From Orbicella franksi (lineage: Eukaryota), in the NCBI GenBank assembly GCA_964199315.1, contig OZ116708.1:6324001-6388000 (forward strand): a stretch of DNA of 64,000 nucleotides. Direction: 5' to 3'. The notes under the pieces were generated by a model. It had not been told where the DNA came from. It ran no database searches and saw only the letters and a program-made list of their open reading frames with translations. Each line of letters starts with the position of its first letter. Position 1 is the stretch's first letter. The position numbers were made by a program, and so were the translations under genes. This document shows positions 3,271-34,400 of this stretch, piece by piece.

Positions 3271-3811
3271 CTAAGTATTGCTTATCTGGTCGAGGTAGTC
3301 CTCAAATTCCTCATGCGTAGTAAAAGCTTCTGTGGCAGACGTTTCACTAACTTTCAGCATGATCTTGCCATTACTGGTCCACAGGAACTTGACATTGTTC
3401 TTCCTCTTGTATTCCTTGATTCGTCCAAAGAGCCTTTTACGGTAGCCGGTCAAGGATTCGTTTATGTAGATCTTGTTACTTCGAGAGATGGATTCGCCTA
3501 TTTCAGTTTGTAAAGAAGGCAAATGTCGAATATTCTTTCCAACAAAATGTTTGCGTTTCTTAAATACTTCTTCTCTCTTGTCCCTTTGGAGAAATTTAAC
3601 AATCATTCGATTTTTTACATTTTTCGAGTCTGGAAGCCTGTGAGCATATTCGTCGTAGTATAGGGTTATCAAGACTAGTTTTCGGGACACCAGTGATCTC
3701 TAAGCAATCCCTTCTCAAGTACTGTTGTGTTTCGTCGAGCGAACATTCGATTCGATATAAAGACTCTGCAGTCTTGTCAGCCATGTCCGCCATCTTTGTT
3801 TGTTTCGCTTC
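3271..3811 (-). pseudogene. LINE ORF1, 3' portion (with an internal deletion/frameshift near 3645-3665)
   Basis: QQYLRRDCLEITGVP...AHRLP...IVKF...YINESLT...KFLWTSNGKI motif series typical of ORF1 of this LINE group; split over two frames. Confidence 0.85.
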
Positions 3812-4340
3812 CACTGGAAAAATTGGCAAATTTCCCAATTGGAATTTTGTATGGATATTGTATGGAATTTGTGTGGAAATTGAATATTTTCCAAACATGG
3901 AAATAGTACAAGTTTTCCAAACATGGATTTCGTCCGAATACCAATTTGGATTCTCAAGATACCAAACATGGATTTCCGAAATTTGTGCGAGAACATCATA
4001 CTTGGAAATAAACAAAACCTCATGTGGATTTTATGGCAACAGGTCAACATACTGGGATTTTCCTTTTCCCAAACATGGATTTTCTTTTCCCATACCTGGA
4101 TTTTAACAGAACCCACTGTGTAAAGTAAGAAAACCACACTAGAATTTGCTACTAAATACATGTTTGGATTTGTATCTAAACAAATTTGGTTTCTAACCAC
4201 TTTCCCTATTTTGGAAAAATGGAAAACCATAATGGAAATTAATGTAATTCCAGGGTTGGTATTCAACATACCAAACTTGGTTTTTGGAGTTTTCTGTTTT
4301 GGGATTTGCAGCCTTCCCGCCTGGGAAATTTTAATAGCCA
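3812..4340. repeat. Left TIR and subterminal motif array of the CACTA element
   Basis: CCAAACATGGA occurs at 3891, 3917, 3962 and 4069, a variant at 4090, and an inverted copy near 4159. Confidence 0.85.
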
Positions 4341-5426
4341 ATCGATATCTACACCACAGCTGCACACAATTTAGCAATTAATATATGTGCAACACCCCAG
4401 CTGTCCATTTGTTGGGTCAAGACCAGTGTAATGTAATTTATCTTACAGAGGTGAAAACTAAACAGATAGAGCTTAATTTTAGCATACTCTCTGGTAATTT
4501 TTTATTGTTACTACAAAAATATCATCTGTTTTTGCATCTAAGTCAATAAAATTGATGCAAATTAACAATTAGATTAATTAAATTACAAAGTTGCTGACAA
4601 TAACTACAACTGAACTGCTACATGCTTATGCATGTGACAGCGTTGTTTGTTTCAGGTAAAGAAGTACAAAGTTAAAAGACTTCTGCCTTTCACTACTAAG
4701 TTATTTTGAACTGGGCTTACAGATACATCATGAAGTTAAAAACTGTCCACACTTGATGTACCATAAAAGACAGTAGCAAAAAAAACTAAAAAAGAAAGAA
4801 CTATCCTCAAATAGAATGCTCTCTATTGCATTGTGGAAAAAAAACATAGCTATTAATACAGGTAAAGCCTTTTGTTCTTTAAAAAGGATTCACTCAATTT
4901 TATGCCTTGATTATAATCTTTGTCAGTGATAAATTACAAATCTGAACTGACAGTATGCTTAGAATAATGATAATTATTAACAGTTTCGGGGTGCTTCTGC
5001 TGGGGCCCAAAAGTATATGTCATGCTCTTATTTTTTATTTTATTGGTCCAGCTTTGGCTAAACTGGAAATGTTTTCAGACAAACATGGGAATATAAAAAT
5101 AGATATATATTTTATACTTTTAAGCCCCGCTAATGCACTTTCAGCTTCAAATTCAACAGTTAACTCTCTGGTCTCGAAGGAGTACCCTGCTTCACAGAAA
5201 TCTTACAGAATGTGAACATTTTCACCAACTTGTAGCTGCAAGACTATTTAAACATAGAATACATCCAGCATATATTTTAAGAAAATACTGCTAAGAACAC
5301 TTGAACCGTAAATTTCAACAGTAAACTATCTGGCCTTGCAAAAGTGTGTTGTGGAATTGGTACACAATACCACCTACTTGTTATGGCAAGTCTACTTAAA
5401 CATCCAGTTAAGTACATACTCAGAAA

Positions 5427-8400
5427 TTAAGAGTCCTTTGCTGTAGACTCTTCCAGAATAATCTCCTTGACTACTTTAACATCATCACGAGTCAGTGATC
5501 CCTGATCTTCCTCCTTAGAGTCATGTATGGTAATATAGCCCTCCTTGCGGAGTAAATTTGCAATTGCTCTAATGTGTGTCATCTTGTCCTTGCCTCGTAA
5601 AAGGCCAAGGTTGAAGATTTTTTTCATCTTTTGTAATTGATCCATCTTCACTTCTTTTATGGATGGTTTTCCTAGAACCACCATGACAATTAAATCTGCT
5701 GTGGTCTGAGTCATGTCTAGGATAAAAATAAACAAAATGTTAAAAGAAAGGCTATATTCACATAGTATACATTCAAACCAGGCCACTTGACCATTTAAAT
5801 GTTAATTGAGAACAATGGATAGGCCCCTTTTTTACAAACAGACCAATAGCATTAAAAATACATTTTGTAACCAAGCATAGGCAAATAAATCCTTCTTTAT
5901 CTTAATTTGTTACCTAACCAAGACAAGTCGCTGCGACAAGTCCCCTTGTCTGTTCTGACCTTTAAGAATGCATTCTTGGCAGCAAAATATAATTATTGTC
6001 ATTAGTGTGGTGTTCCAGGAAATATCCATTCCTCTCTCAGGGAAGGTTTTTAGGTTTGAATTTCCAAACCCCAACAGAAATTCCAGTTCATACATCAAAC
6101 TTTCCTTTAAAAATTTTGGCTATTAAGATCCCCCCCCCCCCCCCCTTCCCCACTAGAATTTCCAATGACCTTACATGGACATTTTCTGGCACTCCATACT
6201 CTAAACTAAATACAATTATAATGAAATCATGTTTTACAAACCCATCCCACATTGAGGTTTGAAAACATAACAAAATTAGCCTTGCTTTGTCTCATAAGCT
6301 ACATTTAAGTATAGTTTTTTGGTTCTCAAGATCATGGAACAAAAAAACTGGAAGTCAATATTTATTGGCAGCAATAACTTCTGTAATTCCCTCACCTTCA
6401 TCAAAATAAAGGTTGTACGTTTTCACACGTTGCAACTGAGATGCATATCTGGGTGGACTAGGACTTCCACTACTGGACCCGGCTGACTCGGTTGACTCAG
6501 ATGCACTGTCTGTTGACAGCACTTCTTCTCTGGTAAGGGGTAATTCTTTGTGATGGCATCTCTGCTCCCTGATTTTCTTTAAAACTGTTTCCAGGACTGC
6601 TTCTTTACCTAATCCACACTCTGGAAAAAGATGAGTGTCATCTTCGACCAATTTTGCCACAAACTTGTCTACTTGGATAGCATCTGCCTTATTTCTATAA
6701 ACTGGTAAGGTACTTCCATGTGACCATCTTTTCTCTACTTCCTTTGTAATCTTTTTTTTCCTGGTAAAGGAAATTATTTATTAACAACTGTTTGATCTTA
6801 TTATATTTTTTCTGTTAGACACAGGACCACAAAGTCATCAGAACTTAAGTTGACCATCAAGTGTTACTATAACAATTTGGAAGAGAAATTCAACTCATAA
6901 CATAAAATCATCTTAAATTTTCATCTTTGTGTAATGTTCCAAGTGGTGAGAAGCTCTTGGCATTACAAGTAATCAAGTTAGTTTCATAAAAGCACAAGAT
7001 AAAAATTATGTAAACATGATCCTTAGGTTAACTACCAGAATGGCACACAGAAGACTTTGCATTACTTTTTAGATTAATACCTACTTTGTATTGTAAATGC
7101 TCTTTTCCTTGCAATTTAAGTACTGTCTTTCTTCTGTTGTAAGCAGCCTGTCATAATCCTTGAATGATGATCTTTCAATCTTCTTTCTTTTGTGACCACT
7201 ACCAAAAGGGTGGGAGGTATCTAGAAAAAAAGCAATCAAATAATATTGACAGTTCTGAGATTACATGTGGTTTCCAGTTGTAAGAGTGATTTTATACTCT
7301 GTGTGATGAAGAAGAATACCTCATACACGTAATGCAGAAAAATTTAGATTACTGCAACGATTTGACCCGTCTCCCCCACTCCCCAAAATTTCTTGAGGAT
7401 GGCCTAATCTTGGCAATGCTCTCGTTAAAACTAGAGTTAAATAATAGGTTTGGAAAGAACTTGGCCAAGGAAGAATATTTACCATTCACAACAGGTTTAA
7501 TAGCCATGAGCTCCCTTGAGAAGCGTTCTTTCTTCCCAATTGTAGTCACCCCTAGTTTTTCAAGTGTCGTATCCTCTTCCAGGCGTTTGCTTAATAATGC
7601 TTTTCCATCTATCTCTTCTTCAACAAATTTTTGACCAACAGACTCGCCAAAAAAACTACAAATCCACGTTTTTACTTGTTCTGGTGTCCAGCCTGCAAAT
7701 AAAAAAAGTATCATAACTAGTTCCACAGAAATGGAAGAAACTTACGAGAATAATTCTTGCATAATTCTAAGTTTAAACTAACCATTCTCAACTTGCATTG
7801 TTATGAACAAATGCATTAATAAACAGACTGTGATTAGAAAATTCTTCCGAGAAAAACAGCTCGAACAAGTGAGTTGGAGGTAGCTGAGAAACAGGATGGA
7901 ACGCAACGAGTTCATAAAAAGTACTTCAAATTTATTCACTGATCGTAGCCGCTTCCTAGACTTTGGTCTATAATATGCTATCTTACTCTAACATTTAATA
8001 AAAGCAAGCTTCGACTTGAAAAGTGGGAAGTGATGTTGGACTTTGTCGGTTTAAATTAAATTCGAAGATATTTATATTATCAAGCGAATCCCCCATTTTG
8101 CAATTCGATTTAATTTCGCATTCCATCCAAGTAAACGCACGAAAAAATACTACAGAACAATTTTTTTGGCCTGCCACTTAAGCATTTAACTTGGGTTTCA
8201 CTTCTGCGAAATCGTCGGTAGATTAGAAGCGAAAACAGACCATATAAAACTTACCAACAATGTTCGCGGGTTCAGTTGAAGACACATCTGTTTCCCGCCT
8301 TTCGTTCTGTGGAAATGCAATCATCTTCTCCTTGCGCGCTTCTTTTGCGACTCTTACTTTGACTTTGGGATAAAATTTGCTCCACCTCTTCGTCATTCTC

Positions 8401-8469
8401 AGAAACAGAATCGCCTGCTTGTTGACTGCATAAAGGCGAGGATCGAAAAGCCTTTCCTTTCGACGCCAT
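5427..8469 (-). CDS. Transposon-borne SAM (sterile alpha motif) domain protein, 5 exons, about 380-400 aa
   Basis: Exons 8255-8396 (or 8255-8469 with a frameshift), 7483-7692, 7085-7220, 6396-6760, 5427-5716; all GT-AG with compatible phases. Exon 2 reads WTPEQVKTWI...FVEEEIDGKALL...LEKLGVTTIGKKERF, a SAM pattern. The start codon is ambiguous. Confidence 0.8.
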
Positions 8470-8667
8470 AAATCTGAACACGCTCCCTCACAACGCCCGC
8501 CCAGCTCAGCACGTAAATTCGGCGAAGAGGGCGGGAAAATGGTTGCACAGTCCTTTATACCAAGACTGCTCCCATCTGATTGGTTGCTGAAGCTTTCCGT
8601 CCATTTGATTGGTTCCAACGAAACCGGTTGGACGCTGTCCTGTCGGACTGACTGCTCATATGACAAG
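8470..8667. promoter_or_regulatory. Putative bidirectional promoter inside the transposon
   Basis: 198 bp, CpG-rich, between divergent ATGGCG starts (8469 minus, 8668 plus). GGGCGGG at 8529; GATTGGTT (inverted CCAAT) at 8578 and 8607. Confidence 0.6.
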
Positions 8668-11600
8668 ATGGCGGATCTTGCAGCCGCTTCTTTGTGTTTC
8701 TGTACTGAAAGAAATTCCGTTCATGTTCATTGCCCCTGCCAAGAATGCCGTGGAAAACCTGTAAATTATAAAACTCAGGAAAGACATCTTTCAGCCTTGA
8801 GACTGTTGCAACAAGAAAACAGTAAGTTTATTTTACTGTCGAATGTTTAGAAACGCCTCTACAAATTAACTGAGTTCTCGATCGATCCGTCGGAGCAGCT
8901 AGCTAGACGTGCACATTATGGACATAAAATAGGTATAGGCTTACAATTTGAAACATGTTTCTATATTTTTTGGTTAACGGAGGTAAATAAGTACTGCTTT
9001 ACTGATAAACGTAACGACAAGCAACGTAAAAACAGCCCTATTCAACTAGTAGTTTCCATGTTTTTTATTAACCAAGTTTTTGCAACTGGTGTGACAAATC
9101 TTCAACTATCCTCATGCAGGGTGGCAGTTTAAATTTGTTTTGGATATAAAAAATATAAATAGAAAAAGATGTTGTGTCTGTCAAATAATTATTAGGAATC
9201 TCACACAAAGAAAACCAAAGACTAAACTAGTTTTTAACTATTTCTATTATATAATTACCAGCTTCAGGGATTAGTTCAATGTTACCGGAAACCAGTCTCC
9301 CTGAAAGTCACCTGGATAACTCAGCTGTTCCAAGTTGTTCTGAAGATTATGTGGAAGGGAATGAATGCTCTTCATCATTAAGTGGCTGTGGTAGCTTTGA
9401 CAATTATGATGGCACTGTTTTTAGTGGAACCTATACAGAGTTTGGTTCCCATAGTTCAAGCAATTTAAGAGGGAATCCAGAGGAAGCTGAAGAAGGTGTA
9501 ATTGAGGATGACACATTGGAAGACAAACTCAGAGATGCCATTGTATGTGCCATATTTGAAGCACTTGATCTTTTGCATGAGACAAAGGGATCTTTGAAAA
9601 ACTTTGAGGAGCTATTAACAATGGCTAGACACATGTACTGCAAGGGAGCTGGTTTGGGGGAAGATGATGAAACAGTCAAGAAAAAATGGCCCAATAACTG
9701 GACTGCTGCGAGGCAAATGCTAATTGCAGAAGGTTATGAAGATGCTAAAGAGTACTTCATATGTTTCAGTGATGTATATCCACAACATTGGGACATTTTA
9801 GAATCTCAGTCAGATTTATGCCGCCATTGTGGAGAAAAAGGTGCCATTCCCTATTATTATTTGGGTCTCAAAGGAAAGATTAAGCGCTGGTGTCACATCT
9901 GGATATGTGTTACAAACTCTTATCACACTGGAGAGAAAAAGAACATTGGCTGAATAGAAATGAAGGCTGGCATACAAAGAAAGAACTATGGGATGGGAAG
10001 CGATTTGCAGAATTATCATGGTTCTGGGATTCCAATACTGAGTATTGCCTGCCGGTCCGATGTCAGTATCCTGGATGTAGCAATATAATTTCAGCTGAGA
10101 CAGTTTTAGCAGCTGATGAAAATGAAGATGGATACCATAAAGTGAGATGTGATTGCCGTCATAGTACCTTCCATGTTCAAGCAAAATATGTTAGAGGAGA
10201 TCCTCGAAACATTGCTTTTGTGGGTGAGTTACAGTGCAGATAGAACTGTTGTAAGTTCAGGGAAGGTTTTTGTGTTATTGTGTTTTTGAAATTGGCAAAG
10301 TAAAAACAGTGGTTAATTATTTGGCACATCTTAAGGGCAGTGTAATACTGTCTGACTTGTGGTCACAATCCACCAACAGCAGTCACCTAACAGTACAGAA
10401 AGTGATCTTTTTTTGCTATAGTGAAGATAATTTGAATTAGCTGTCACATTAAGTATACATTTAGACAATTGTTAAAATATTTTCTTTACATTTTTTTGAT
10501 GTTTGTTTAATAGCTCACTGGGACGGGTTTCAACTGTTTGGATCAAGCCACAGATCAACAGGTTATGCTTCTCAATTTTAGTGGTTGGTTTACACATGAT
10601 ATATATTAAAGTACACACTGAAATATTATTTATATTTATGGACTTACAGTTTCCTATACAGTTATTCCATTGTACAGTGTAGATCAACATGTATTCTACA
10701 ATAAAAGTCTATTGTCTTTTTGAATGCTTTTAGAAGTCTTCACAAGAAAACAATAACAGCAAAACCATTTCTTTCCCACTAACATTTTATTTTTATCCTG
10801 ATGAGTTTTAACCTTAAAAAGGTAAGTGTACTGGAACATTATTCATCTGTTTATTTTGTGCCATATTTGTAGGAACAATTGATGTTCAAGTTGCAACAGT
10901 TTCAAAGCAAGATAGACAACACACAGTTGAAGTGTACACTGTTGGATTTGTACCATCATACCTATTGCCTGATTCACGACCTGTTAGCCTGGATCCCTTT
11001 CTTGATCCACTTGTAAGAGACTTTGAAGATGGATTCATTGAAGGTTATTTATATTTATATTTACTATGGTTTTATTAGGAAGATAAGTAGCAAGATTTGG
11101 CTTTGTGCAGGTTGTACATTTTGACTAATTAAAATTAGGGTTTGGGGATAGATCAAGATAAGTAATACCATTGATCTTAAAGATCTTTAGTGAAGGTATT
11201 TACTAGTCAATATTATTCTTCAGTCAATATTTAATTCTCAATTAAATTGATATAAAAAAGTGATAACTTGTGTCAATTTGACTCCTTATTAAATTGTGTT
11301 AGAGGGTGTTAAAATGTTAACTTTTCAAATAAACAGTTAAACATTGGTTTAAATTTATCTTTGGTTTGAAATTTTTCAAACCAGTTTAAATTTGAACCAC
11401 AACATCTACATTAAGGCAATTAAATTAGAAGCTAAAATACTTTTAATTACTTTTTACTTTTAGGTATAGAAGTTGACTATAAATTAAAGGTTGATTGTTT
11501 TTCTGAGGGAAAGATGATTATTCGACATTTGCTGTTATTGTGGACAGGAGACCACCCTGCACAATGTGAGGTGTGCAAATCAAAGTCATCTGGTGGTAAG

Positions 11601-14600
11601 AAGGACTGCAGAAGATGCAAGTTGGAAGGTGATTACTTTGAGGTGTCTCGTGTTCAGCTATGTAATAACTGTGAATCATTAGTTATTGTAGAATTCTACT
11701 AGTATGATATGATATACTTTCTTTCAGTACTGTGGTATGTTTCAGTTGAATGCAACTGTTTTGATTATAGATAGTACAGTAAATTATTGATGTTACTAAT
11801 TGTTAATTTTGTGACAATAAATTTAAATTTATTAAGTTAATTTCAATATAGGATTAATTAAATTTATTTTAATTTTTTCTGTTAATGTTACTAAAGAGAT
11901 TCACCAAAAGAAAGGATTTAAGTGCAATAAAGGGTGAATTTTTGTGCTGTTACTTTGTGCATAGAAGTGACGCACAATCATATAACTATGTACAGTATGA
12001 ACTATCAACTACGTAGTACAAATATGTTTGTCCCTAGACATTCAGCTGAGTGATTGAAAATCTTGGACTTGTCAGCATATGTACCATGACCTTTCATGTT
12101 GTGTATAAGAGCACAACATGTGTAGCCTTAAACAGTTTCAATTGGCTGTAAATCTTGTCTATTATTTCTTGTTGTTTTATTTCTAATTATTTATTTTTTC
12201 ATTTCAATTACAGGAGTTTATCTGCCAGATCAGAGACATTACTATTACACTTGATTTAGGGAGCATTATAGGTTCCCTTGGGAGAAAAGGGATTTGAAGG
12301 ATGAAATTCCAAAAATGACTGAAGTTGAGCAGGAAGAACGAAAAACAGTGTTTGAAAACCTTTCAAGGGAGATTGGCTTTCTTGGAGTATCACTGCTTCA
12401 CAGGTTGAATGCATTGTATGGTTTCGATGTACTACAGGATCTTGTTTTTGATGCCATGCACCTTGTTTCACTCAACATTGTAAAGAGAAGAGTGCAGTAC
12501 TGGCTATCAAATGGTATTCTTGACAAGGAGGAGTTTGGAGAAAGACTGAAGAGGATGCCATGGTCCAAAGGTACAGTTTATGTTGCTTGTTTTGTCTTTT
12601 ATCTGCTACAACCAAAACAAGTGCAAGTTTATCTGTGATTTCTTTAAACATTAATTTAGAAACAGGATGTGTAGTACATGGCAATAATAAATCAGAGCCT
12701 AGCAGTGAGTGTAATCCAGAGCCTGTAGATAATTTTACTTTGTTGCATTAAATGTCAAACCTTAAAAAGCAGGTCTCATTACTGTTTTTGTTACAGTCAT
12801 CTTGAACACCAAACCACATCCCCTGATATAAAATAATTTCTGCAATGATCATACTAATTGTTTTGATTACCTTCATGGTGCCAAGCCAATAGTCTGTTCA
12901 TTTGGTACTTGTTTTCTTAGATTTCCCATTCAGAAGTTTCATCTTTATCTTCTTCTTTTTTTTCAGGATACAAAGTCAGTAGAATCCCAAATGATATAAC
13001 AAAGATGGGATTCTGGAAAGGTGAAGCTTTTGTCCATTCTTGCATGTTTACAATAATAATGAGTTAGTTTTAGTTTTTTTAGTTTAGTCAGGGGTATGAT
13101 ATCAAAATATTGCTACTCTGCTTGACTTACTTGGGAAGCCAGTATATATAAGTATTTTGAGATAATTTGAGCCCAGTACAGTGTAGCTGCAAAATTTTAT
13201 TAAAAATCATATCTTCGCATTATTTTGTTCAATAGCTGAGGAGTACCAGAAGCTAGCATTTCCTGCATCAGAGTTTGTATTGGAAGGACTTCTTCCTGCA
13301 GAAGAATATGAGGTGTGGGCACCAATCCCTCGTATTGTGGAGCTCATTTTCAATTGTGGAAGAAATGGTTGGACTAGTGAAACAATTGCACATCTGAAAG
13401 CCCTCAGCTGGAGACACTGTATCCTTGTAGAAGACAGATATGGTCCTTCGGAATGTGTCATTACCCTACACAGCCTCACTCATCTACATGAAGACATATC
13501 AAGGTTTTCATCACCTGATAACTTTTGGTGCTTCCAGTTTGAGAAGGCAGTTGAAAGGTAAAGTTAACATAGAGTTTACAAATTAACCTCAATAAATTGG
13601 CAAAGATAAATGCATACAATAATAAGGGACCTAAAACTTTCAATTGATTATTACACAAACATACATGTAGACTTCACTTATACTCGAACTTCAAGAGTAG
13701 CTTTTCTGGTAATTTTTTCAAGCAAACTACTGTTGAGAAGAAAGCAAGGAATAAAAAATTTAATTAGTGAAAAAGCATGCAGACAAATTTATGCAAGATT
13801 ATTATAGGACAAAGTTAGCTTTCAGAAGGAGTTGAAATGCATGGTACTGCATTAGTGATTAGGAAGTGACTGTTCCAGAATTTGGCTGCTAACGACAGAG
13901 AACACAGTCAAAATATCTAAAACATAGAAAATCTAAAATAAATGCTAGAATGTTTATCTTCATGTGCTACTTAATTATCTTGTAAGGTATGTTAAACAGA
14001 CAAGCAACCGAAAAGGAGTAGAAAAAACTTTCGCACGCAAGGAGTGGAGAGTTCCTGCAGATTTGGAGACTTGGTAACAAGGGATTAAGAGCTGCAACGA
14101 CAGAAAAGTCAGGAAAATATAGCAGACAAAAGGTACTATTTATTAGTGTCATAAAATTTACTGGTTCCTACTTTTTACAGCTTTTTGTTTTGTGTGTGTG
14201 TGTGTGGGGGGGGGGGGGCTGTGTGTGTGTGTTTGTGTTCAGAAAACATGTAAGATCATAAATAGCTAATTTCAGTTATATGGGTTAAACTTTACAAATC
14301 CTTTGAGATTTGAATGAATGACCAGGTACCTTCTTAACCAGGTACTTTCTTATTTTAGATGGTGGCCTCTTCTCTAGAATCTGCAAAGGACCTTATTAAA
14401 GAATGTGCATGTGGCAGAGATGAAGCTCGAGCTAACAAAGGAATACTCACTGGAAGTGGCAACATTGAGCAGTTGCAAAGAGATCAAGGAATAGCAATTC
14501 ATGCCTATAACAATCAAACTCTAACTCCTGAGGTGGCTCATTCATTCCGTAGTGCCTATCTACCATTACACAATGAAGGTGCAGGAGGAACTCTTTATCG

Positions 14601-15174
14601 CACTGGAGATGACATCATAGCCTTGCAGGGGAACCAAGAGATTTGCCTCAAAGTCATAAAATTCTACTTAGTGGAACATGAGAATCTTTTCACGCCATTT
14701 GCTATTTGTGACGCCTTTCAGTATATCTTGGATGATGATGGCCATCCATTGAGACATCAGCTCAGTGATACTATCTATGTCAAGCCTTTTCAGACATGCA
14801 CTTGTATTGGCTTAAATGACATTGTAAGGCCAATCATGTTGTGGTTGGAACCTGATGGAAAATGCGCAGTTGTGGATCATTCCAGAGCAACCATCCCCCT
14901 TCCCAAGGTTATTGTCCCTGCTTATCCCCAACCTGGTGACATGGTCAGTGTGAAAGGAGAGCGGGATGAATCATGGCATGCGGAAGTTCGACAGGTTGAT
15001 GCTGAACAAAAGAGAGTGAAAGGATATTTCTTTGTGAAGCATTTACACTGGGAGAGAAATCACTTGTGGGTTAGGGAATCAAGTGCACGAGCTATGGACA
15101 GTATAAGCTACAAAAGTATTATTGATATTTTGCCAGGGATATGGCATGGTCCAAACTGGCAAGAACAAATCTAA
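8668..15174 (+). pseudogene. CACTA/EnSpm-type DDE transposase, 10 exons, about 1065 aa if repaired
   Basis: Exons 8668-8821, 9262-10223, 10514-10561, 10873-11043, 11464-11628, 12214-12570, 12967-13020, 13236-13557, 13987-14132, 14359-15174. Motifs HCPCQEC, HWDG, TGDHPAQC...CRRC, DAMH, GFWKAEEY, HSLTHL...WCFQFEK. Lesions: 1-nt deletion near 9895, TGA at 12252-12254, frameshift near 14045. Confidence 0.9.
14181..14237. repeat. (TG)n/poly-G microsatellite in a transposase intron
   Basis: Seen directly in the sequence. Confidence 0.9.
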
Positions 15175-15419
15175 CATTGATATGCCTTATCATAAGTTGG
15201 TAAGCAGAAAAAGAATTCTAAATAGTTCATTCCAGCTATAGATGTGCCAGCTCCTTGGAGGAATTCAATAATTAATTTATATATTAATTTCTTTCTTCAA
15301 TTCAAAGTACAATAATATATTGGTACAGTGTTCTAAAACAGTGTATTTAGAAAGTAAACGTTTCTTTGTAGAAATACAGTTTGCATGCCAACAGTAGTTT
15401 GGCAATCAAAAACCCCTAT

Positions 15420-16166
15420 AAGGAAATTTAGGATTTTCCATGTTATCATGTCAATTACATGTGTAAATTTAGTTTTTTTTCTTGATGAACAAAAATACAT
15501 ACTTGGAAAATATAAATTTCTCTGTGGAATTGCAATTTTCCAAGTGAAGACTGGAAAATAAAATTTCCTTGTTTGTTTTGATTATGGAAAACTTAACTTG
15601 GGTGTTTTATCCAACAATTTTCCATACCATAACCAAGTATGGAAACTGAGTAGATGTGGATTTATATTTTACATGCAAAATACACATGTGGAAATTTGGT
15701 ATTTACTTTTTGATCGACAAAAATACATATCTGGAAAAAAAAATTCTCTGTGGAAATACAATTTTCCAAATAAAGATTGGAAAATAAAATTTCCATGTTT
15801 GTTTTAAATATGGAAAACTAAAGTGAAATATTTCATCCAAAAAATTTCCATACAAGAACCAAGTATGGAAACGGAATGGATGTGGAGTATTTATTTTACA
15901 TACAAAATACAAACGTGGAAATTGGGAGTTTTTTTAATGAACAAAAATACATACGTGGAAAATAAAAAATTATCTGTGGAAATGTAATTTTCCATGTTAG
16001 GATTGGAAAATGAAATTTCCATGGTTGTTTTTTATATGGCAAACTAAATTGGAGTATTTTATCCAACAATTTTCCATACAATAACCAAGCATGGAAACTG
16101 AGTAGGTGTGGATTTTCTATTTTACATACAAAATACGCATGTGGAAATTTGGTATTTTTTCCAGTG
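15420..16166. repeat. Right subterminal higher-order repeat: three ~226-bp units plus a partial one, ending in the TIR
   Basis: ACAAAAATACAT recurs at 15489, 15717 and 15941. Each unit contains CCAAG(T/C)ATGGAAAC and ends in a GTGGAAATT(T/G)GG motif. Confidence 0.92.
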
Positions 16167-16415
16167 TTCGACCGAGCCAATAGCTTCCTTGTATTTCTTA
16201 TCAAGCTTAGTTGCCTGTTCTTTGACGTTTTGCAAAGTTTGCACAACGGTATCATATTTGTTTGATAGAAACTGCTGGGATTTCTCCAAAGTATTGCATC
16301 TTTCTGTTAGCAAGACGATACTTGCTTTCAGCGACTGCATTTCCATCTTGATTTCTTGCCTAATACTTGGTAAAAACTCTTCATTCCATATTCGTCGTAG
16401 TTCATCTACCTGCAT
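16167..16415 (-). pseudogene. LINE ORF1, 5' portion (coiled-coil region)
   Basis: MQVDELRRIWNEEFLPSIRQEIK...KYKEAIGSVE joins in frame to AKQTKMADMADK (from 3808 downward) once the insertion and one TSD copy are removed. Confidence 0.88.
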
Positions 16416-17957
16416 GATCTTATCCTCCCTAGTCCCTTGGTAGGGTGATTAGTCTCTAGCAGCGTAATTTAGTGTCTTAGTCTCTGTTTCATTCAAACTT
16501 CATCAGCGCGCCAAAATGAACGGCGGCCATGATGACGTTAATAATCAATTATTAACGAATGGTTATCCGTTATCGTCTAGGATTCTGAATATACCAGTAC
16601 TTAATATTTGAACATAATATCTTGCAGCAGGTAAGCTAAACGTAACTTTTCTGTTAACTTTTGTGTTCCATAGCAGGTATGTTTCTCAATGCGTTCTCTG
16701 TTCTTCCCCTTACGTCCTACCCGAAATATCTCTGAGTTGTTTCTTCAGCTCATACCCCGCCTTCTCCACAAGCTAAAAATCCCTAGGGATTGTGCTAACA
16801 CGGGAACTGGCGCGCAAACTCTAACGAGGCGAGCCGGAAACCACCTGAGAGAGTGTTAGAAAGGTCGAGGCTTTCCTTCTATTTTCTCCGTTCGTCCCCA
16901 GTGGTTTCCCAGATGACAATTGGTCTATTTCTACACCGTGTGTTTCTTTATGCCTACTTACGATTAATTTAGACATAGTTAGCCTTTTCTTTTCCTCTAC
17001 ATTCTTTGTGGATTTACTAAGAATTTCGTTATCTGTTACACCGTGTGCTCCCTTTGCATTCCCTTGCGTCCTCCCTGCGTGCCTTACACATGAACAACGT
17101 CTGACCAAATGTAAGAGCAAATTATAGCGCGACTACTCGAACAAGGCCACCCAGAAGGAAGCTAATCAGTCAAAATGTGAACTGAAAACAATAGACTTGT
17201 AGCTTTCTCGAGTCAGCAGGTAATGTGGATCTGATCTGTTTGACATGAAAACATTAACAATATCCATTGTTCCCAATCGACGTTCTGGTTGGTTTTTTTA
17301 ACTCTCATCCAGGTGGCCTGGCTTGAGTATTCGCACTGTAAGGGAGCGCATTGGGTAACAGACGAATAAATGCAGCAAGGAATCGACAGCGTATGCACGT
17401 GCTCCAATTACTCTGCAACGTGCCATTAATGTTGGGGCGTGTACAGCGAAACAAGCGAGCGAAAAAATGCAAGAGCTATTACTACAATGCTATTGCTAAA
17501 ACTTGAATTGGTTTCGCTACTGATTGATTCAGATGAATACCGAAAGGGAATCAAAATTCGCTCAAACTACTACGTTTGGAGCCGACCTTTTCCCGAGCTT
17601 ATAAGACAACGGAAAAGGCGGGCGAATAGGGTGGGAAATCGAGGGGAAAAAAGAAAGAAATCAGACTAGATAATATGCATTGTTTGGGTGCAAAACGAGA
17701 GGATATATTTCGAAGTTTACAACCTCAATAAAATATTTATCTAAGCTTCCTCTGATCTTTGGAATTTCAATTGTATTTTTAACATGTAAAATGGTTACAG
17801 AACATTGTATTGGAATATTGTAATAGAACTCAGTTCCGTTTACCTACATATCACGGTAATCAAAGTCTCAATTCTTCTTAAAATGTCACACCAAAGTCAA
17901 GCGAGTGAAATTACTAACCCATATATTCGTCGTTAATCCCCCTGCGCAAGTCGCGGG

Positions 17958-31400: not shown

Positions 31401-34400
31401 GTATATAGGATTATTTTGGCCGCTTCGTAGCTAGTTTTCAAATAACTTACCAAAATAATTCGTGTGCAGTACATATTTTCAATGATGTGTATTATTAGTA
31501 TAATCTGTCGTCTATGTTAGGCATCTGTAAGAGGCTAGTTAAAACTTAGGCCACCATGAAATCAACATGTTTCGGCACAATCAAATCAACTGACAAAAAT
31601 ACAATGCTAACCAGTAAATAGTTTGGACTGATCATAAATATGTAATTCCATTGGTCGGCCCATTCCGTGAACAACGACTTCCTTCAAAGAAGTTGTCATG
31701 TTGTACTCGTGAATACTTCGACTATTCCAGTCAGACCAGAAGAGAACGTCACCATATAGTGCGAGTCCGAATGGGTGCATAGAATCCAGTGATAAATCTA
31801 GTATCACCACGCGATTATTTCCTTGTAGGTCCACCCTCTCAATTTTATCATGGTACCCATCGCACCAGTACAGGAGTCTACTTTGGTAATCCATTGCGAG
31901 CGAGTTCACCCACGTAAGTCCGAAACTAACAAGAGTTGCCCTGGCAGAACCGTCCATGTTGGCTTGTTCGATTTTTAGCGATACTCCTCTGCCACCCCAA
32001 TACATCTTTCTAAAAGGATAGTGTTGCAAATGAGCATAAAGCGGTAACAAAAGTAAACGTTGGTGAGAACATTGTCTTACAATGATAGCTTTTTTTCCCG
32101 GAAAAAGCAGAATTATTTCTAAACAGACTGACCCCTTTCCGAAGATTTGTTAACATTCTCGAACATTATAAAGCATTGTTGAAGATGACCATATGTCTCA
32201 AAAACGTCGAGAACGATCGTTAAAAGAAATAGAAGAGTGACTGAACTTCAAAATATTAATTTGCATAGATATCTGATAGTTTGCATAGATATTCGATAGA
32301 ATGTCAGCAGAATTAAACGCCATGTAATTGCATAGTGCTTTTTTAAAGTTTGGATTACCTTTCTCCAATATCAAGCAGTATGGCTCTTGGCTTTTCGATG
32401 TTTGATGTGACTAGACTCCTTCTAGATGACCCATCCATCCTTGCGACCTCAATTCTATTATTTGCCTCATCTGTCCAATAAATATTACGTCCAACATAAT
32501 CTACTGCCAGTCCTTCCGGGGTAATAACATTATTATACGCAATAACTTCAACAGAGGACTCGTTAGGAAATGCTCTGGCCACTAATCCCAATGTCACGTC
32601 ACTCCAATAAATTTTTCCTTCGACTGGATCGTAATCAACGGCCACGGGTCTTGAGATGTTTGTGCTGATTTCCAGAGGATAGCAAGGGATCTCGGGCACT
32701 TCCAGAGGTACTTTGTAAATTTCTCCAGTGTCTGCTTCAGCAAAAATTATGAATTTGTCCGAGCTTGTTTTGTCGAACATACCTTGAACATTAAACAAAT
32801 AAATCCATGAGAATCGAACTGATCTTCATATTTCACAGAAGTACATAAAGACTTCCTTACTATTGGTGATGCCGCTCTCAGTATTCACCTGCTATTATAA
32901 CGAATGTCGACAACTTAAAAATCTCAAGTAAGTAGACCTTACAATGAATCAAAAGGAGATCAGACCTGTTTCATTCACAGAGCATTTTTTTTCAGCCAAC
33001 GTTATATCTATCGACATCACTTATTTTAACCTCTGAGTAGTAAATAATGTTAGCGTGCTTTCGCTCTATTCTTTTTTGTTCTTTACAAGGTGCCTTTGTC
33101 CTCACTGATTCCACGACTTAAAGCCAAATCTGCAAAGCCATATGTTACAAGGAGCGTCTGAACTACCAAGGAGTACACACAATCTAACCAAACTGCTGTG
33201 CTGTTGTCCCTAGGAAGGGTAAAGCTCAATCTATCAACTTTTTAAACTTGCTCAACTCGTTATATTGTTTACGGAGGCGATGTTATCACTGTACTATGAA
33301 AACGGTGTTCAATCGGGTCCCTTTTTGTAACGTCTTTTTTGTTGTTGTTGTTTTTACCCTAGTTATTAGTGTTTCACAAGTCAAGACGTGCAACACGCGA
33401 CTCAACATTACGATGTAATCCACGTCATATAAGATATGTTACAAAGAGAGGGAAGATGATCCGTACAGTAACCGAATACAGACAAGTCAGCTATAGTGGT
33501 ACTGATTGAAAAGATTGAAGCAAATTAACCTATTGATTTCTCACCATGGTCACAGGTTTTCCCATCAGATTTCAGGGCAATACCCGTCGGACATGCGCAC
33601 TGGTATCCTCCTGGCTTCAGAAGGCAGAAATCGCTACAGAGTCCATTGTTCTGAGAACAATTATGAGAACCTGACAAAAGTCAATCGAAATGAGTAATTT
33701 CCAGCAATAGATATTTTCAAATGTTTCGTATCTTGTGTATGTTATTTTTTTAATCAAAGTTCATCATGCACTATGACTATACATCTTGTGATTTACTGTT
33801 GCTTATTTCTTTTTTAAATATATTTTTTAACAAAATCGGACTGGCAAAGAACCATTCTTTGCGACAACAGAGTTCAATAAGTGTTTCACCATCTGATGAC
33901 TGATATATTTTCCCAGAGTTGTTGTCGAGTGTTAGCGAGGAAGAGGAGCGTTGCTTAGCTTGTGTGATACTTGATAACTTTTGCATCCACAGATTAAATA
34001 CAAAACTTGGTTTATTGCAGGACTGTACGACAATNNNNNNNNNNNNNNNNNNNNNNNNNNNNNNNNNNNNNNNNNNNNNNNNNNNNNNNNNNNNNNNNNN
34101 NNNNNNNNNNNNNNNNNNNNNNNNNNNNNNNNNNNNNNNNNNNNNNNNNNNNNNNNNNNNNNNNNNNNNAATATCAAGGTTGGATTAAATACGTGAATGT
34201 CCATCGGCTTCTGGAGGCCATTAACTACGATTTCCTGGTTCCCATTGCTTACGTTTACACGTGAAATACTCTTGGTGTTCCAATCTGTCCAGTATAGCAT
34301 ATCCTGATACACAGCCAGTCCGAAAGGATGGATATTAGCCCCAGATGACATTATTAACTGTCTGTTTCCTCCATTGAGGTCTGATACTTCAATTTGATCA

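What the first reader, a model, noticed from the sequence alone, without database searches (positions are those of the whole stretch)
3812..16166. Complete two-gene CACTG-ended EnSpm-like element in an animal genome
It has 24-bp imperfect TIRs starting CACTG, a 3-bp TSD, subterminal repeats, a 10-exon transposase and a divergent accessory gene. CACTA/G termini, a 3-bp TSD and a transposase plus accessory protein are established for En/Spm, but there the two products come from one spliced transcript. Here they are head-to-head genes. I cannot tell whether this family is catalogued.
Basis: partly seen in the sequence, partly recalled or inferred. Interest (0 to 1): 0.7.

Follow-up and report, generated by a model that had tools for sequence, protein, structure and literature searches.

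The report
Two-gene EnSpm-like transposon in coral
This is a real 12.4-kb cut-and-paste DNA transposon of the EnSpm/CACTA group in a stony coral. It carries a transposase gene and a back-to-back SAM-domain helper gene, a layout shared with relatives in other corals and sea anemones, but this copy has disabling mutations in both genes.

Summary
- CACTGG...CCAGTG ends, with a 24-nt core TIR (21/24) that extends to 42 nt at 81%.
- A TTC duplication, shown to be an exact 3-bp TSD by three paralogous empty sites.
- TGGAAA-rich subterminal repeats.
- A 10-exon transposase on the + strand.
- A 5-exon SAM-domain gene on the - strand.
The two start codons lie 198 bp apart, across a CCAAT/GC-box region.

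Poly(A) RNA contigs carry canonical splice joints for all four accessory introns and the first four transposase introns.

The transposase has the CMC signature: HWDGF, WTGDHPA, CRRC, HSLTH and HLHED. It aligns colinearly with Transposase_21 ORFs.

"Complete" holds for structure only. This copy has a 1-nt deletion, an in-frame TGA and a 5-nt deletion in the transposase, and a 1-nt insertion in the accessory gene. The two other close copies (97-98% identical) are also broken.

The head-to-head layout, CAC(T/A)GGAAAAA ends and 3-bp TSDs recur in diverged relatives in this genome, in other coral assemblies and in the anemone Exaiptasia. There NCBI annotates both genes as uncharacterized.

I file it as a variant of a known kind. 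Repbase and Dfam could not be checked. The scan also noted this kind of element on another piece of this genome (s1-223768).

The parts
3809..3811 (.). Left copy of the 3-bp target-site duplication (TTC)
   Evidence: empty paralogous sites have a single TTC.
3812..3853 (+). Left terminal inverted repeat, starting CACTGGAAAAAT (24-nt core, 42 nt at 81%)
   Evidence: The same 24-mer lies at the ends of the C5, C10, C2 and C15 elements.
3854..4290 (.). Left subterminal region with CCAAACATGGA / TGGAAA-core repeats
   Evidence: families D3, D4; enrichment against the interior.
5427..5716 (-). Accessory gene exon 5 (stop codon at 5427-5429): conserved C-terminal domain of about 80 aa. The 3' UTR runs to about 5290. 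This copy lacks 118 nt there that the other copies and the RNA have.
   Evidence: RNA joint 5716/6396. 89 and 119 relatives. Model pLDDT 82.6. The 118-nt difference is shown.
5983..6210 (.). Nested small high-copy repeat inside accessory intron 4
   Evidence: at least 30 other places in the genome at 70-83% identity.
6396..6760 (-). Accessory gene exon 4: conserved three-helix region followed by an acidic, Ser-rich linker
   Evidence: RNA joints, paralogues, alignment A3, model.
7085..7220 (-). Accessory gene exon 3 (basic linker)
   Evidence: RNA joints.
7483..7692 (-). Accessory gene exon 2: SAM domain
   Evidence: Pfam SAM_1, 26.7 bits (cut-off 23), E 7.5e-6. dN/dS is 0.06 against the element of another coral.
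8255..8469 (-). Accessory gene exon 1 (ATG at 8469-8467). It has a 1-nt insertion near 8313-8315 that shifts the frame in this copy.
   Evidence: RNA joint. The extra base is absent from the C5 and C10 copies, from the RNA contigs and from L060.
8470..8667 (.). 198-bp region between the two start codons: a putative bidirectional promoter with two inverted CCAAT boxes and GC boxes
   Evidence: The spacing is similar in the C2 relative (about 210 bp). In Exaiptasia the two called genes lie 240 bp apart.
8668..8821 (+). Transposase exon 1 (ATG at 8668): a CPC..C zinc-type motif with a weak Transpos_assoc match
   Evidence: RNA joint 8821/9262. Pfam PF13963 E 0.038.
9262..10223 (+). Transposase exon 2. 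It has a 1-nt deletion near 9888 that shifts the frame in this copy.
   Evidence: RNA joints. The extra G is present in the C5 and C10 copies and in the X14 contigs. The frame is continuous in the C2 relative.
10514..10561 (+). Transposase exon 3: first catalytic Asp (HWDGF)
   Evidence: RNA joints; translation.
10873..11043 (+). Transposase exon 4
   Evidence: RNA joint and a loose end that continues into exon 5. BLASTP to PF02992-positive ORFs.
11464..11628 (+). Transposase exon 5: second catalytic Asp (WTGDHPA) and the C(2)C motif (CRRC)
12214..12570 (+). Transposase exon 6, with an in-frame TGA at 12252-12254. Relatives have Gly at that position.
   Evidence: The TGA is shared with the C5 copy.
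12967..13020 (+). Transposase exon 7
   Evidence: GT-AG sites, phase and colinearity with the C2 relative.
13236..13557 (+). Transposase exon 8: H(3)H motif (HSLTH) and catalytic Glu (HLHED)
13987..14132 (+). Transposase exon 9. It has a 5-nt deletion near 14047 that is private to this copy and shifts the frame.
   Evidence: the C5 copy, the diverged C4 copy and L060 all have the five bases.
14359..15174 (+). Transposase exon 10 (C-terminal 271 aa plus stop)
   Evidence: dN/dS is 0.27 against L060.
15474..16160 (.). Right subterminal tandem array (3 x about 226 bp) rich in TGGAAA cores
   Evidence: families D1, D2.
16125..16166 (-). Right terminal inverted repeat, ending CCAGTG
16167..16169 (.). 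Right copy of the TSD (TTC)

Best explanation
Window 3812-16166 is one copy of a low-copy, recently mobile cut-and-paste DNA transposon of the CMC (CACTA/EnSpm-Mirage-Chapaev) group in a stony coral.

Shown:
- A DDE transposase gene of 10 exons (about 1066 codons when read as in the other copies) on the + strand.
- A 5-exon gene (about 404 codons) on the - strand. It encodes an N-terminal acidic stretch, a SAM domain, a three-helix region, an acidic/Ser linker and a conserved C-terminal domain of about 80 aa.
- The two start codons are 198 bp apart, across a CCAAT/GC-box region.
- Both genes give spliced poly(A) RNA.
- Insertion duplicates 3 bp.
- The same architecture, CAC(T/A)GGAAAAA termini and 3-bp TSDs define a clade in stony corals and sea anemones.
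- Both genes evolve under purifying selection between species.

Inferred:
- The transposase cuts at the CACTG ends.
- The accessory protein plays the part that TnpA/ORF2 plays in plant CACTA elements. It would bind the TGGAAA-rich subterminal repeats, perhaps through its winged-helix-like C-terminal domain, and self-associate through the SAM domain to bring the two ends together.
- The short shared promoter couples the expression of the two proteins.

This copy cannot supply either full-length protein as assembled. It would have to be mobilised in trans.
For: Ends, TSD and empty sites:
-.
- Other copies and relatives each have their own 3-bp TSD: ATT, TCA, TAT, TTT, TTT, AAA, TAG, TTT.

Splicing of both genes in poly(A) RNA contigs:
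-. The joints are GT..AG for the + gene and CT..AC for the - gene.

Transposase:
- The CMC motifs HWDGF, WTGDHPA, CRRC, HSLTH and HLHED are present, as the group is defined in PMC12730594.
- Exons E4, E5, E6 and E8 give colinear BLASTP matches to PF02992-positive ORFs of the same genome; E7 adds only a marginal match, E 0.08.
- The full-length Exaiptasia relative hits Transposase_21 at E 1.1e-5, and many relatives carry precomputed PF02992.

Accessory gene:
- SAM_1 scores over its cut-off.
- It lies inside the TIRs, head to head with the transposase, in G000 C2 and C15, in L060 and L063, in Exaiptasia L064 and in L065 and L067.

Selection: dN/dS is 0.06-0.34 for T_E1, T_E10, A_E2 and A_E5.

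Subterminal repeats: 19-fold TGGAAA enrichment.

Lesions in this copy.
Against: - No biochemical evidence links the accessory protein to DNA binding or to transposition.
- Its C-terminal domain gives only weak structural matches. Foldseek E is 0.46 or worse, although the top rows are mostly winged helices. The best Z is 4.7. Atlas TM is 0.40-0.42 to PadR/MarR-type winged helices.
- The middle domain matches nothing.
- Window exons alone do not reach any Pfam transposase threshold.
- Introns 5-9 of the transposase are not confirmed by reads, because the single read-laying run covered 5200-11199 only.
- Transcription start sites and strandedness were not resolved. Expression is low: 20 reads in X23 and none in X21.
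- The two 1-nt indels lie in short homopolymer runs and could be assembly errors.
Confidence: 0.85

Rival explanations
1. The SAM-domain gene is a passenger. On this reading it is a host gene or gene fragment captured once by the element (transduplication) and has no role in transposition.
For: - SAM domains are common host modules.
- NCBI annotates the Exaiptasia homologue as an ordinary uncharacterized gene.
- No DNA-binding fold could be shown convincingly.
Against: - The gene sits inside the TIRs in the same head-to-head position in relatives whose transposases are only 38-66% identical, in corals and in a sea anemone.
- The deletion derivatives C15 and L060 keep it while losing most of the transposase.
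- dN/dS is 0.06 for the SAM exon and 0.34 for the C-terminal domain.
- Outside such elements only 119 clusters in 1.84 billion representatives match, nearly all of them short fragments.
Confidence: 0.07
2. The element is a member of Chapaev or Mirage, or of a separate CMC lineage, rather than of EnSpm/CACTA proper.
For: - CAC...GTG termini and 3-4-bp TSDs are also the hallmarks of Chapaev (PMC4079192).
- The Transposase_21 score of the best full-length relative is below Pfam's cut-off, 25.1 against 28.6 bits.
- The clade is well separated from the other, strongly PF02992-positive EnSpm ORFs of the same genome.
- The anemone relatives end in CACAG, not CACTA or CACTG.
Against: - The CACTG terminus, subterminal repeat arrays, the presence of a second gene and the large size (8-12 kb) are the classical EnSpm traits.
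- The nearest named relatives outside Cnidaria are fern proteins at 27-30% identity. One unnamed Logan protein of that branch (P0267) carries PF02992.
- No Mirage or Chapaev reference sequences were on hand, so this was not tested directly.
Confidence: 0.15
3. The window copy is in fact intact and autonomous, and the apparent lesions are assembly errors.
For: The 1-nt differences near 9888 (GG against GGG) and 8313-8315 (AAA against AA) are homopolymer-length changes, typical of long-read consensus errors.
Against: - The TGA at 12252-12254 is a substitution shared with the independently assembled C5 copy.
- The 5-nt deletion near 14047 is not a homopolymer change and is absent from three other sequences.
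- Either one truncates the transposase. The TGA lies before the catalytic Glu.
Confidence: 0.03

Closest known systems
Plant CACTA / En-Spm elements (maize En/Spm with TnpA and TnpD; grass CACTAs with transposase plus ORF2)
   Same: - CACT(A/G) termini, a 3-bp TSD and arrays of short subterminal repeats.
- Large size.
- A multi-exon DDE transposase with a Transposase_21-type core and a CxC-type N-terminal motif.
- A second protein encoded between the TIRs.
   Different: - The second gene is on the opposite strand and starts about 200 bp from the transposase start. It is not an alternative splice product (En/Spm), and it is not a second ORF as described for grass CACTAs (PMC4158355); that ORF's usual orientation was not checked here.
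- Its product has a SAM domain and gives no Pfam match to TnpA-type families.
- The host is an anthozoan.
- The transposase is only distantly similar, with Pfam scores below the cut-off.
Animal CACTA-related elements (SmTRC1 of Schistosoma mansoni and the TRC families; PMC1636069)
   Same: Animal hosts, a Transposase_21-like core and spliced transcripts.
   Different: - SmTRC1 has 54-bp perfect TIRs that do not start with CACTA, and a 2-bp duplication.
- Its protein variety comes from alternative splicing of one unit.
- A divergent SAM-domain gene is not described for it.
Chapaev transposons of animals (PMC4079192)
   Same: CAC...GTG termini, 3-4-bp TSDs and the CMC-type DDE signature.
   Different: I did not check Chapaev gene content or TIR structure in the paper. 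My recollection, untested here, is that they are usually single-gene and lack long subterminal arrays. The phylogenetic relation was not tested here.
Exaiptasia diaphana gene pair LOC110235289 / LOC110235292 (XP_020896398.2, XP_020896399.1)
   Same: - Same clade and same architecture.
- A 1064-aa Transposase_21-type protein and a SAM-domain protein, head to head and 240 bp apart.
- Both lie inside CACAGGAAAAAATCAC... TIRs with a TTT TSD.
   Different: - They are annotated as ordinary uncharacterized genes, not as a transposon.
- The transposase is almost intronless (one 1012-aa open frame).
- The termini read CACAG.
- Window exons E2, E4, E5, E6 and E8 are 39-51% identical to it; E10 is only 26% identical.

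Membership tests
CMC (CACTA/EnSpm-Mirage-Chapaev) DNA transposons | Termini 5'-CAC...GTG-3' in terminal inverted repeats | tested here: met
   CACTGG...CCAGTG in the window. The same is found in the C5, C10, C2, C15 and L060 copies, and CACAGG in L064-L067.
CMC (CACTA/EnSpm-Mirage-Chapaev) DNA transposons | Short TSD (2-5 bp; 3 bp for EnSpm) | tested here: met
   TTC is proven by three empty paralogous sites. Eight further elements each have a matching 3-bp TSD.
CMC (CACTA/EnSpm-Mirage-Chapaev) DNA transposons | [quoted passage not shown] | tested here: met
   HWDGF (E3), WTGDHPA and CRRC (E5), HSLTH and HLHED (E8) in the exon translations. They are conserved in the C2 and Exaiptasia relatives. 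They were read by eye, not from a reference alignment.
CMC (CACTA/EnSpm-Mirage-Chapaev) DNA transposons | Sequence similarity to Pfam Transposase_21 (PF02992) | tested here: inconclusive
   - Window exons: no hit.
- Exon of the C2 relative: E 0.015.
- Full-length Exaiptasia relative: 25.1 bits, E 1.1e-5, below the 28.6 cut-off.
- Precomputed PF02992 on many relatives.
- Colinear BLASTP of exons E4, E5, E6 and E8 to PF02992-positive ORFs; E7 only marginal.
EnSpm/CACTA sensu stricto | Terminal pentanucleotide CACTA or CACTG, and subterminal repeat arrays | tested here: met
   CACTG ends. TGGAAA-core repeats occur 25 per kb in the ends against 1.3 per kb inside. The anemone relatives have CACAG.
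EnSpm/CACTA sensu stricto | Second protein homologous to TnpA / plant ORF2 | tested here: not met
   A second gene is present, but Pfam finds only SAM_1/SAM_2 in it and in its full-length anemone homologue. No TnpA-type family is matched. Its orientation is opposite to the transposase.
EnSpm/CACTA sensu stricto | Transposase groups with EnSpm rather than Mirage, Chapaev, Plavaka or Transib in a phylogeny | not testable with these tools
   No Repbase reference sequences were on hand. The tree holds only cnidarian relatives, other coral EnSpm ORFs and fern proteins.
SAM-domain proteins | Match to Pfam SAM_1 / SAM_2 over the curated cut-off | tested here: met
   Window exon 2: SAM_1 at 26.7 bits against a cut-off of 23. 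Exaiptasia homologue: SAM_2 at 32.5-34 bits against 20.5.
Winged-helix DNA-binding domains (for the accessory C-terminal domain) | Three helices plus a beta wing, with a significant structural match | tested here: inconclusive
   - The model has pLDDT 82.6, with helices H3-14, H24-33 and H44-58 and two short strands.
- The Foldseek top rows are mostly winged helices, but E is 0.46 or worse.
- VIA-align best Z is 4.7, with mixed SAP, LEM and Rho-N matches.
- Atlas TM is 0.40-0.42 to PadR/MarR.
- Pfam HARE-HTH scores E 0.036 on the C2 paralogue.

The most novel reading that the evidence does not exclude
A clade of CMC/EnSpm transposons specific to Hexacorallia has replaced the TnpA-type helper by an unrelated protein, expressed from a compact bidirectional promoter. 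That protein would polymerise through a SAM domain and bind the TGGAAA subterminal arrays through a small winged-helix-like domain. This architecture would be undescribed in Repbase, Dfam and the literature. In Exaiptasia, the one named genome checked here, both genes are annotated as ordinary uncharacterized genes.
Probability: 0.35. Interest if true: 0.55.

Novelty: new variant of a known kind. Interest (0 to 1): 0.42.

Why it matters
Accessory proteins of CACTA/EnSpm elements are known almost only from plants. An animal clade with a conserved, selected and unrelated helper would show that the two-protein strategy arose more than once in this superfamily. This helper combines a SAM domain with a small helical domain and is transcribed divergently from a shared short promoter.

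It would also give a tractable case for asking what such helpers do, for example end synapsis by SAM polymerisation.

On the practical side, both genes are annotated as ordinary uncharacterized genes in Exaiptasia. A fragment of the accessory gene is likewise annotated as an uncharacterized protein in the coral Oculina patagonica. Recognising them as transposon genes improves cnidarian gene sets.

The low copy number, 97-98% identity between copies and spliced transcripts suggest recent activity in reef corals.

Tried and rejected
Steps that led nowhere:
- Pfam on window exons one by one gave only SAM_1 and a weak Transpos_assoc hit. Transposase_21 in the six-frame genome scan did not pick up this element, because its exons are short.
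- ESM Atlas feature search with accessory exons 4 and 5 gave nothing usable.
- Fold searches of the two accessory-domain models gave no significant match.
- The look-up of encoding contigs had no record for P0053 or P0183 and no DNA for P0067.
- Literature searches found no description of a SAM-domain ORF2 in CACTA/EnSpm, nor of this family in cnidarians.

Readings considered and rejected:
- The - strand ORF 8223-8666 (TTG start) as accessory exon 1. The RNA joints and the ATG at 8469 fit better.
- Splice routes that would bypass the TGA at 12252 (donors at 11621 or 11643 with acceptors at 12260 or 12264). They shorten the conserved C(2)C-to-PW spacing, and the C2 and Exaiptasia relatives read straight through with Gly at that position.
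- The TIR-like 24-mer in the subtelomeric arrays as further copies. It shares nothing else with the element.

Steps not done:
- The exons were never joined into a spliced protein. All searches used single exons by reference, or natural open frames of relatives.
- The N runs at 34035-34169, 51864-52011 and 52208-52355 lie outside the element and were left alone.

Full report
**1. The observation**

The element runs from 3812 to 16166 (12,355 bp).
- It begins CACTGGAAAAATTGGCAAATTTCC and ends with the inverted partner ...GGAAATTTGGTATTTTTTCCAGTG. The match is 21 of 24, and the complementarity extends to 42 nt at 81%.
- TTC flanks both ends.
- The element sits inside another repeat, an ORF1-like open frame of a retroelement. 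Three other copies of that repeat in the same genome (C4:279861, C7:25905394, C3:26185918) read ...GTTTCGCTTC|GAGCGAGCC... with one TTC and nothing in between. These paralogous empty sites show that the insertion is precise and the 3-bp TSD is real.
- Subterminal repeats are present on both sides: short CCAAACATGGA-type repeats at 3887-4103, and three tandem units of about 226 bp at 15474-16160.
- The hexamer TGGAAA, on either strand, occurs 35 times in the outer 1.4 kb and 14 times in the inner 10.96 kb. That is 25 against 1.3 per kb.

**2. Host and copies**

- Sequencing-run labels show that the host is a coral. The assembly has 497 Mb.
- Two further close copies exist at 97-98% identity.
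  - C5:14919296-14959841 has both ends and an ATT/ATT TSD. It is interrupted by insertions of about 21.7 kb and 7 kb.
  - C10:5850098-5859269 has the left end, with an ATA flank. It carries an internal deletion and is truncated after window position 13424.
- A copy on C4 (78-90% identical) keeps only the 3' half of the transposase.
- A search for the 24-nt terminus found only these elements, two relatives (below) and an unrelated subtelomeric sequence. The count was 24 matches against 2 for the control pattern.
- The family is therefore low-copy, with no MITE swarm.

**3. Gene models**

Poly(A) and other RNA-seq contigs (X14, X12), plus a few raw reads (X23), were laid on 5200-11199. After placing the cuts on GT-AG, the splice joints give these introns.
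- On the - strand: 5717-6395, 6761-7084, 7221-7482 and 7693-8254. All read CT..AC on the + strand.
- On the + strand: 8822-9261, 10224-10513 and 10562-10872. A loose end after exon 4 continues exactly into 11464.

The accessory gene (- strand) has these exons:

| Exon | Window position | Note |
|---|---|---|
| E1 | 8469-8255 | starts at the ATG at 8469 |
| E2 | 7692-7483 | SAM domain |
| E3 | 7220-7085 | |
| E4 | 6760-6396 | |
| E5 | 5716-5427 | ends at the stop codon |

The transposase (+ strand) has these exons:

| Exon | Window position |
|---|---|
| E1 | 8668-8821 |
| E2 | 9262-10223 |
| E3 | 10514-10561 |
| E4 | 10873-11043 |
| E5 | 11464-11628 |
| E6 | 12214-12570 |
| E7 | 12967-13020 |
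| E8 | 13236-13557 |
| E9 | 13987-14132 |
| E10 | 14359-15174 |

- Exons 5-10 rest on GT-AG sites, on phase arithmetic that closes exactly, and on colinearity with relatives. They were not confirmed by reads.
- Read as in the other copies, the transposase has about 1066 codons and the accessory protein about 404. The full-length Exaiptasia homologue of the transposase has 1064 aa.
All searches used single exons by reference, or natural open frames of relatives.

**4. This copy is not coding-intact**

Compared with the C5 and C10 copies, the RNA contigs, another coral's element (L060) and more distant relatives, the window copy carries these lesions.
- A 1-nt deletion in transposase exon 2 near 9888.
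- An in-frame TGA at 12252-12254 in exon 6. It is shared with the C5 copy. The C2 and Exaiptasia relatives have Gly there.
- A private 5-nt deletion in exon 9 near 14047.
- A 1-nt insertion in accessory exon 1 near 8313-8315.
- A 118-nt deletion in the accessory 3' UTR.

The TGA lies between the second catalytic Asp and the Glu. The two 1-nt changes sit in short homopolymer runs and could be assembly errors. The TGA and the 5-nt deletion cannot be explained that way. None of the three close copies is intact.

**5. What the transposase is**

- The exon translations show HWDGF (first D), LLLWTGDHPA (second D), CRRC, and HSLTHLHED (H(3)H followed by the E). This is the C(2)C and H(3-4)H signature that defines the CMC/CMCT group (PMC12730594, citing Yuan and Wessler 2011).
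- Exon 1 has a CPCxxC motif with a weak Transpos_assoc hit, E 0.038.
- The genome holds at least 37 Transposase_21 matches. Window exons E4, E5, E6 and E8 align colinearly at 25-46% identity to several of those long ORFs; E7 adds only a marginal match, E 0.08.
- The almost intronless Exaiptasia relative (a 1012-aa open frame) hits PF02992 at E 1.1e-5 and 25.1 bits, just below the cut-off.
- Its database relatives are mostly unnamed cnidarian-type sequences, many with precomputed PF02992. Then come fern proteins at 27-30% identity.
- In a tree of the E6-E9 block, the window exon groups with the C2 relative and an Actinostola protein (support 98/97). This lies within a large clade that is well separated from the other coral EnSpm ORFs.
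- No Mirage or Chapaev references were available, so the position within CMC is open.

**6. The accessory gene belongs to the element and is old**

The gene lies inside the TIRs and is retained in all close copies. The same architecture recurs in every relative examined: transposase and accessory gene head to head, within CAC(T/A)GGAAAAA termini and a 3-bp TSD.

| Element | Details |
|---|---|
| G000 C2 | 11.1 kb, TSD TCA; all exons open; fewer introns; 45-66% aa identity |
| G000 C15 | 7.6 kb, TSD TAT; keeps transposase E1 and E10 and the accessory gene |
| L060, another coral assembly | 84-89% nt identity, TSD TTT; transposase E2-E6 deleted; accessory gene in frame |
| L063 | transposase and accessory gene head to head; TIRs and TSD not examined |
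| Exaiptasia diaphana LJWW01000192.1 | 12.1 kb, CACAGG ends, TSD TTT; the two genes 240 bp apart; annotated as LOC110235289 and LOC110235292 |
| L065 | TSD AAA |
| L067 | TSD TTT |
| L066 | TSD TAG; only a weak SAM trace |

- Between the window element and L060, dN/dS is 0.08 (T_E1), 0.27 (T_E10), 0.06 (SAM exon) and 0.34 (A_E5). Only the short linker exon A_E3 is above 1.
- A profile of the C-terminal domain finds 119 clusters in 1.84 billion representatives. Nearly all are short fragments.
- Named hits are Oculina patagonica and Exaiptasia, and the full-length Exaiptasia protein has the same domain order.

**7. What the accessory protein may do**

- Pfam finds only the SAM domain.
- The C-terminal domain folds with confidence (pLDDT 82.6) into three helices and two short strands. 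Structural matches are weak. The Foldseek list is dominated by winged helices at E 0.46 or worse. The best Z is 4.7, with SAP, LEM and Rho-N motifs. Atlas TM is 0.40-0.42 to PadR/MarR.
- The middle region is a three-helix unit with no match.
- The proposed role is therefore an inference by analogy with TnpA. It would bind the TGGAAA subterminal repeats and bridge the ends through SAM self-association.
- The 198-bp region between the start codons has two inverted CCAAT boxes (GATTGGTT) and GC boxes, as TATA-less bidirectional promoters often do. Its activity was not tested.

**8. Comparison with what is known**

- CACTA-type elements in animals have been known since SmTRC1 (PMC1636069). Chapaev has CAC...GTG ends and 3-4-bp TSDs (PMC4079192).
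- Plant CACTA elements are described as having a transposase plus ORF2 (PMC4158355). Two genes as such are therefore not new.
- New relative to what I could search are the divergent arrangement with a shared short promoter region and a SAM-domain ORF2 conserved across stony corals and sea anemones.
- I found no paper describing this. Repbase and Dfam were not available.
- The scan's own notes describe the same kind of element on another piece of this genome (s1-223768). They also describe the split ORF1 host repeat and the SAM gene in this window.

**9. Verdict**

This is a genuine, recently mobile but now defective copy of a two-gene CMC/EnSpm-like transposon. It belongs to an anthozoan clade with a conserved SAM-domain helper gene. 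I file it as a new variant of a known kind, of moderate interest.

Noticed in passing
window 5983-6210: A small repeat with a poly-C run, found at 30 or more other places on all large contigs at 70-83% identity. It lies in accessory intron 4 and is present in all three close copies, so it was nested before they spread.
   Followed up: partly
G000 C11:14728 and 17246; C1:17677 and 20193; C3:33877 and 36395; C177:164569, 167086 and 169603; others (L068, L069): A 24-mer two mismatches from the element's terminus (CACTGGAAAATATCCCCAATTTCC) recurs every 2.5 kb or so near contig starts, inside satellite arrays with a period of about 210 bp. It shares nothing else with the element.
   Followed up: partly
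P0255 (Actinostola sp.) against L054:7028-8050: A sea-anemone protein is 76.6% identical over 264 aa to the coral C2 relative, while Exaiptasia is only 44% identical. This could be horizontal transfer between anemones and corals, or old paralogous subfamilies.
   Followed up: no
G000 C5:14919296-14959841 (L002-L006, L012, L013): The second full-length copy carries an insertion of about 21.7 kb in transposase intron 1, with a 10-bp overlap at window 8984-8993. It also carries an insertion of about 7 kb near the right end and lacks two of the 226-bp subterminal units.
   Followed up: no
G000 C10:5734077, 5759268, 5784459: Three identical Transposase_21 hits spaced 25,191 bp apart. This is a tandem segmental repeat holding another EnSpm-type ORF, in a region rich in such hits.
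   Followed up: no
window 3400-3811 and 16167-16580: The insertion target is an ORF1-like coiled-coil open frame of a retroelement. Four uninterrupted copies elsewhere match the left flank at 86-88% and the right flank at 97-99% identity. The element splits that frame.
   Followed up: partly
P0265, P0266, P0268 (Adiantum nelumboides): The nearest named relatives of the transposase outside Cnidaria are fern proteins at 27-30% identity. They form one long branch inside the cnidarian polytomy of the midpoint-rooted tree.
   Followed up: no
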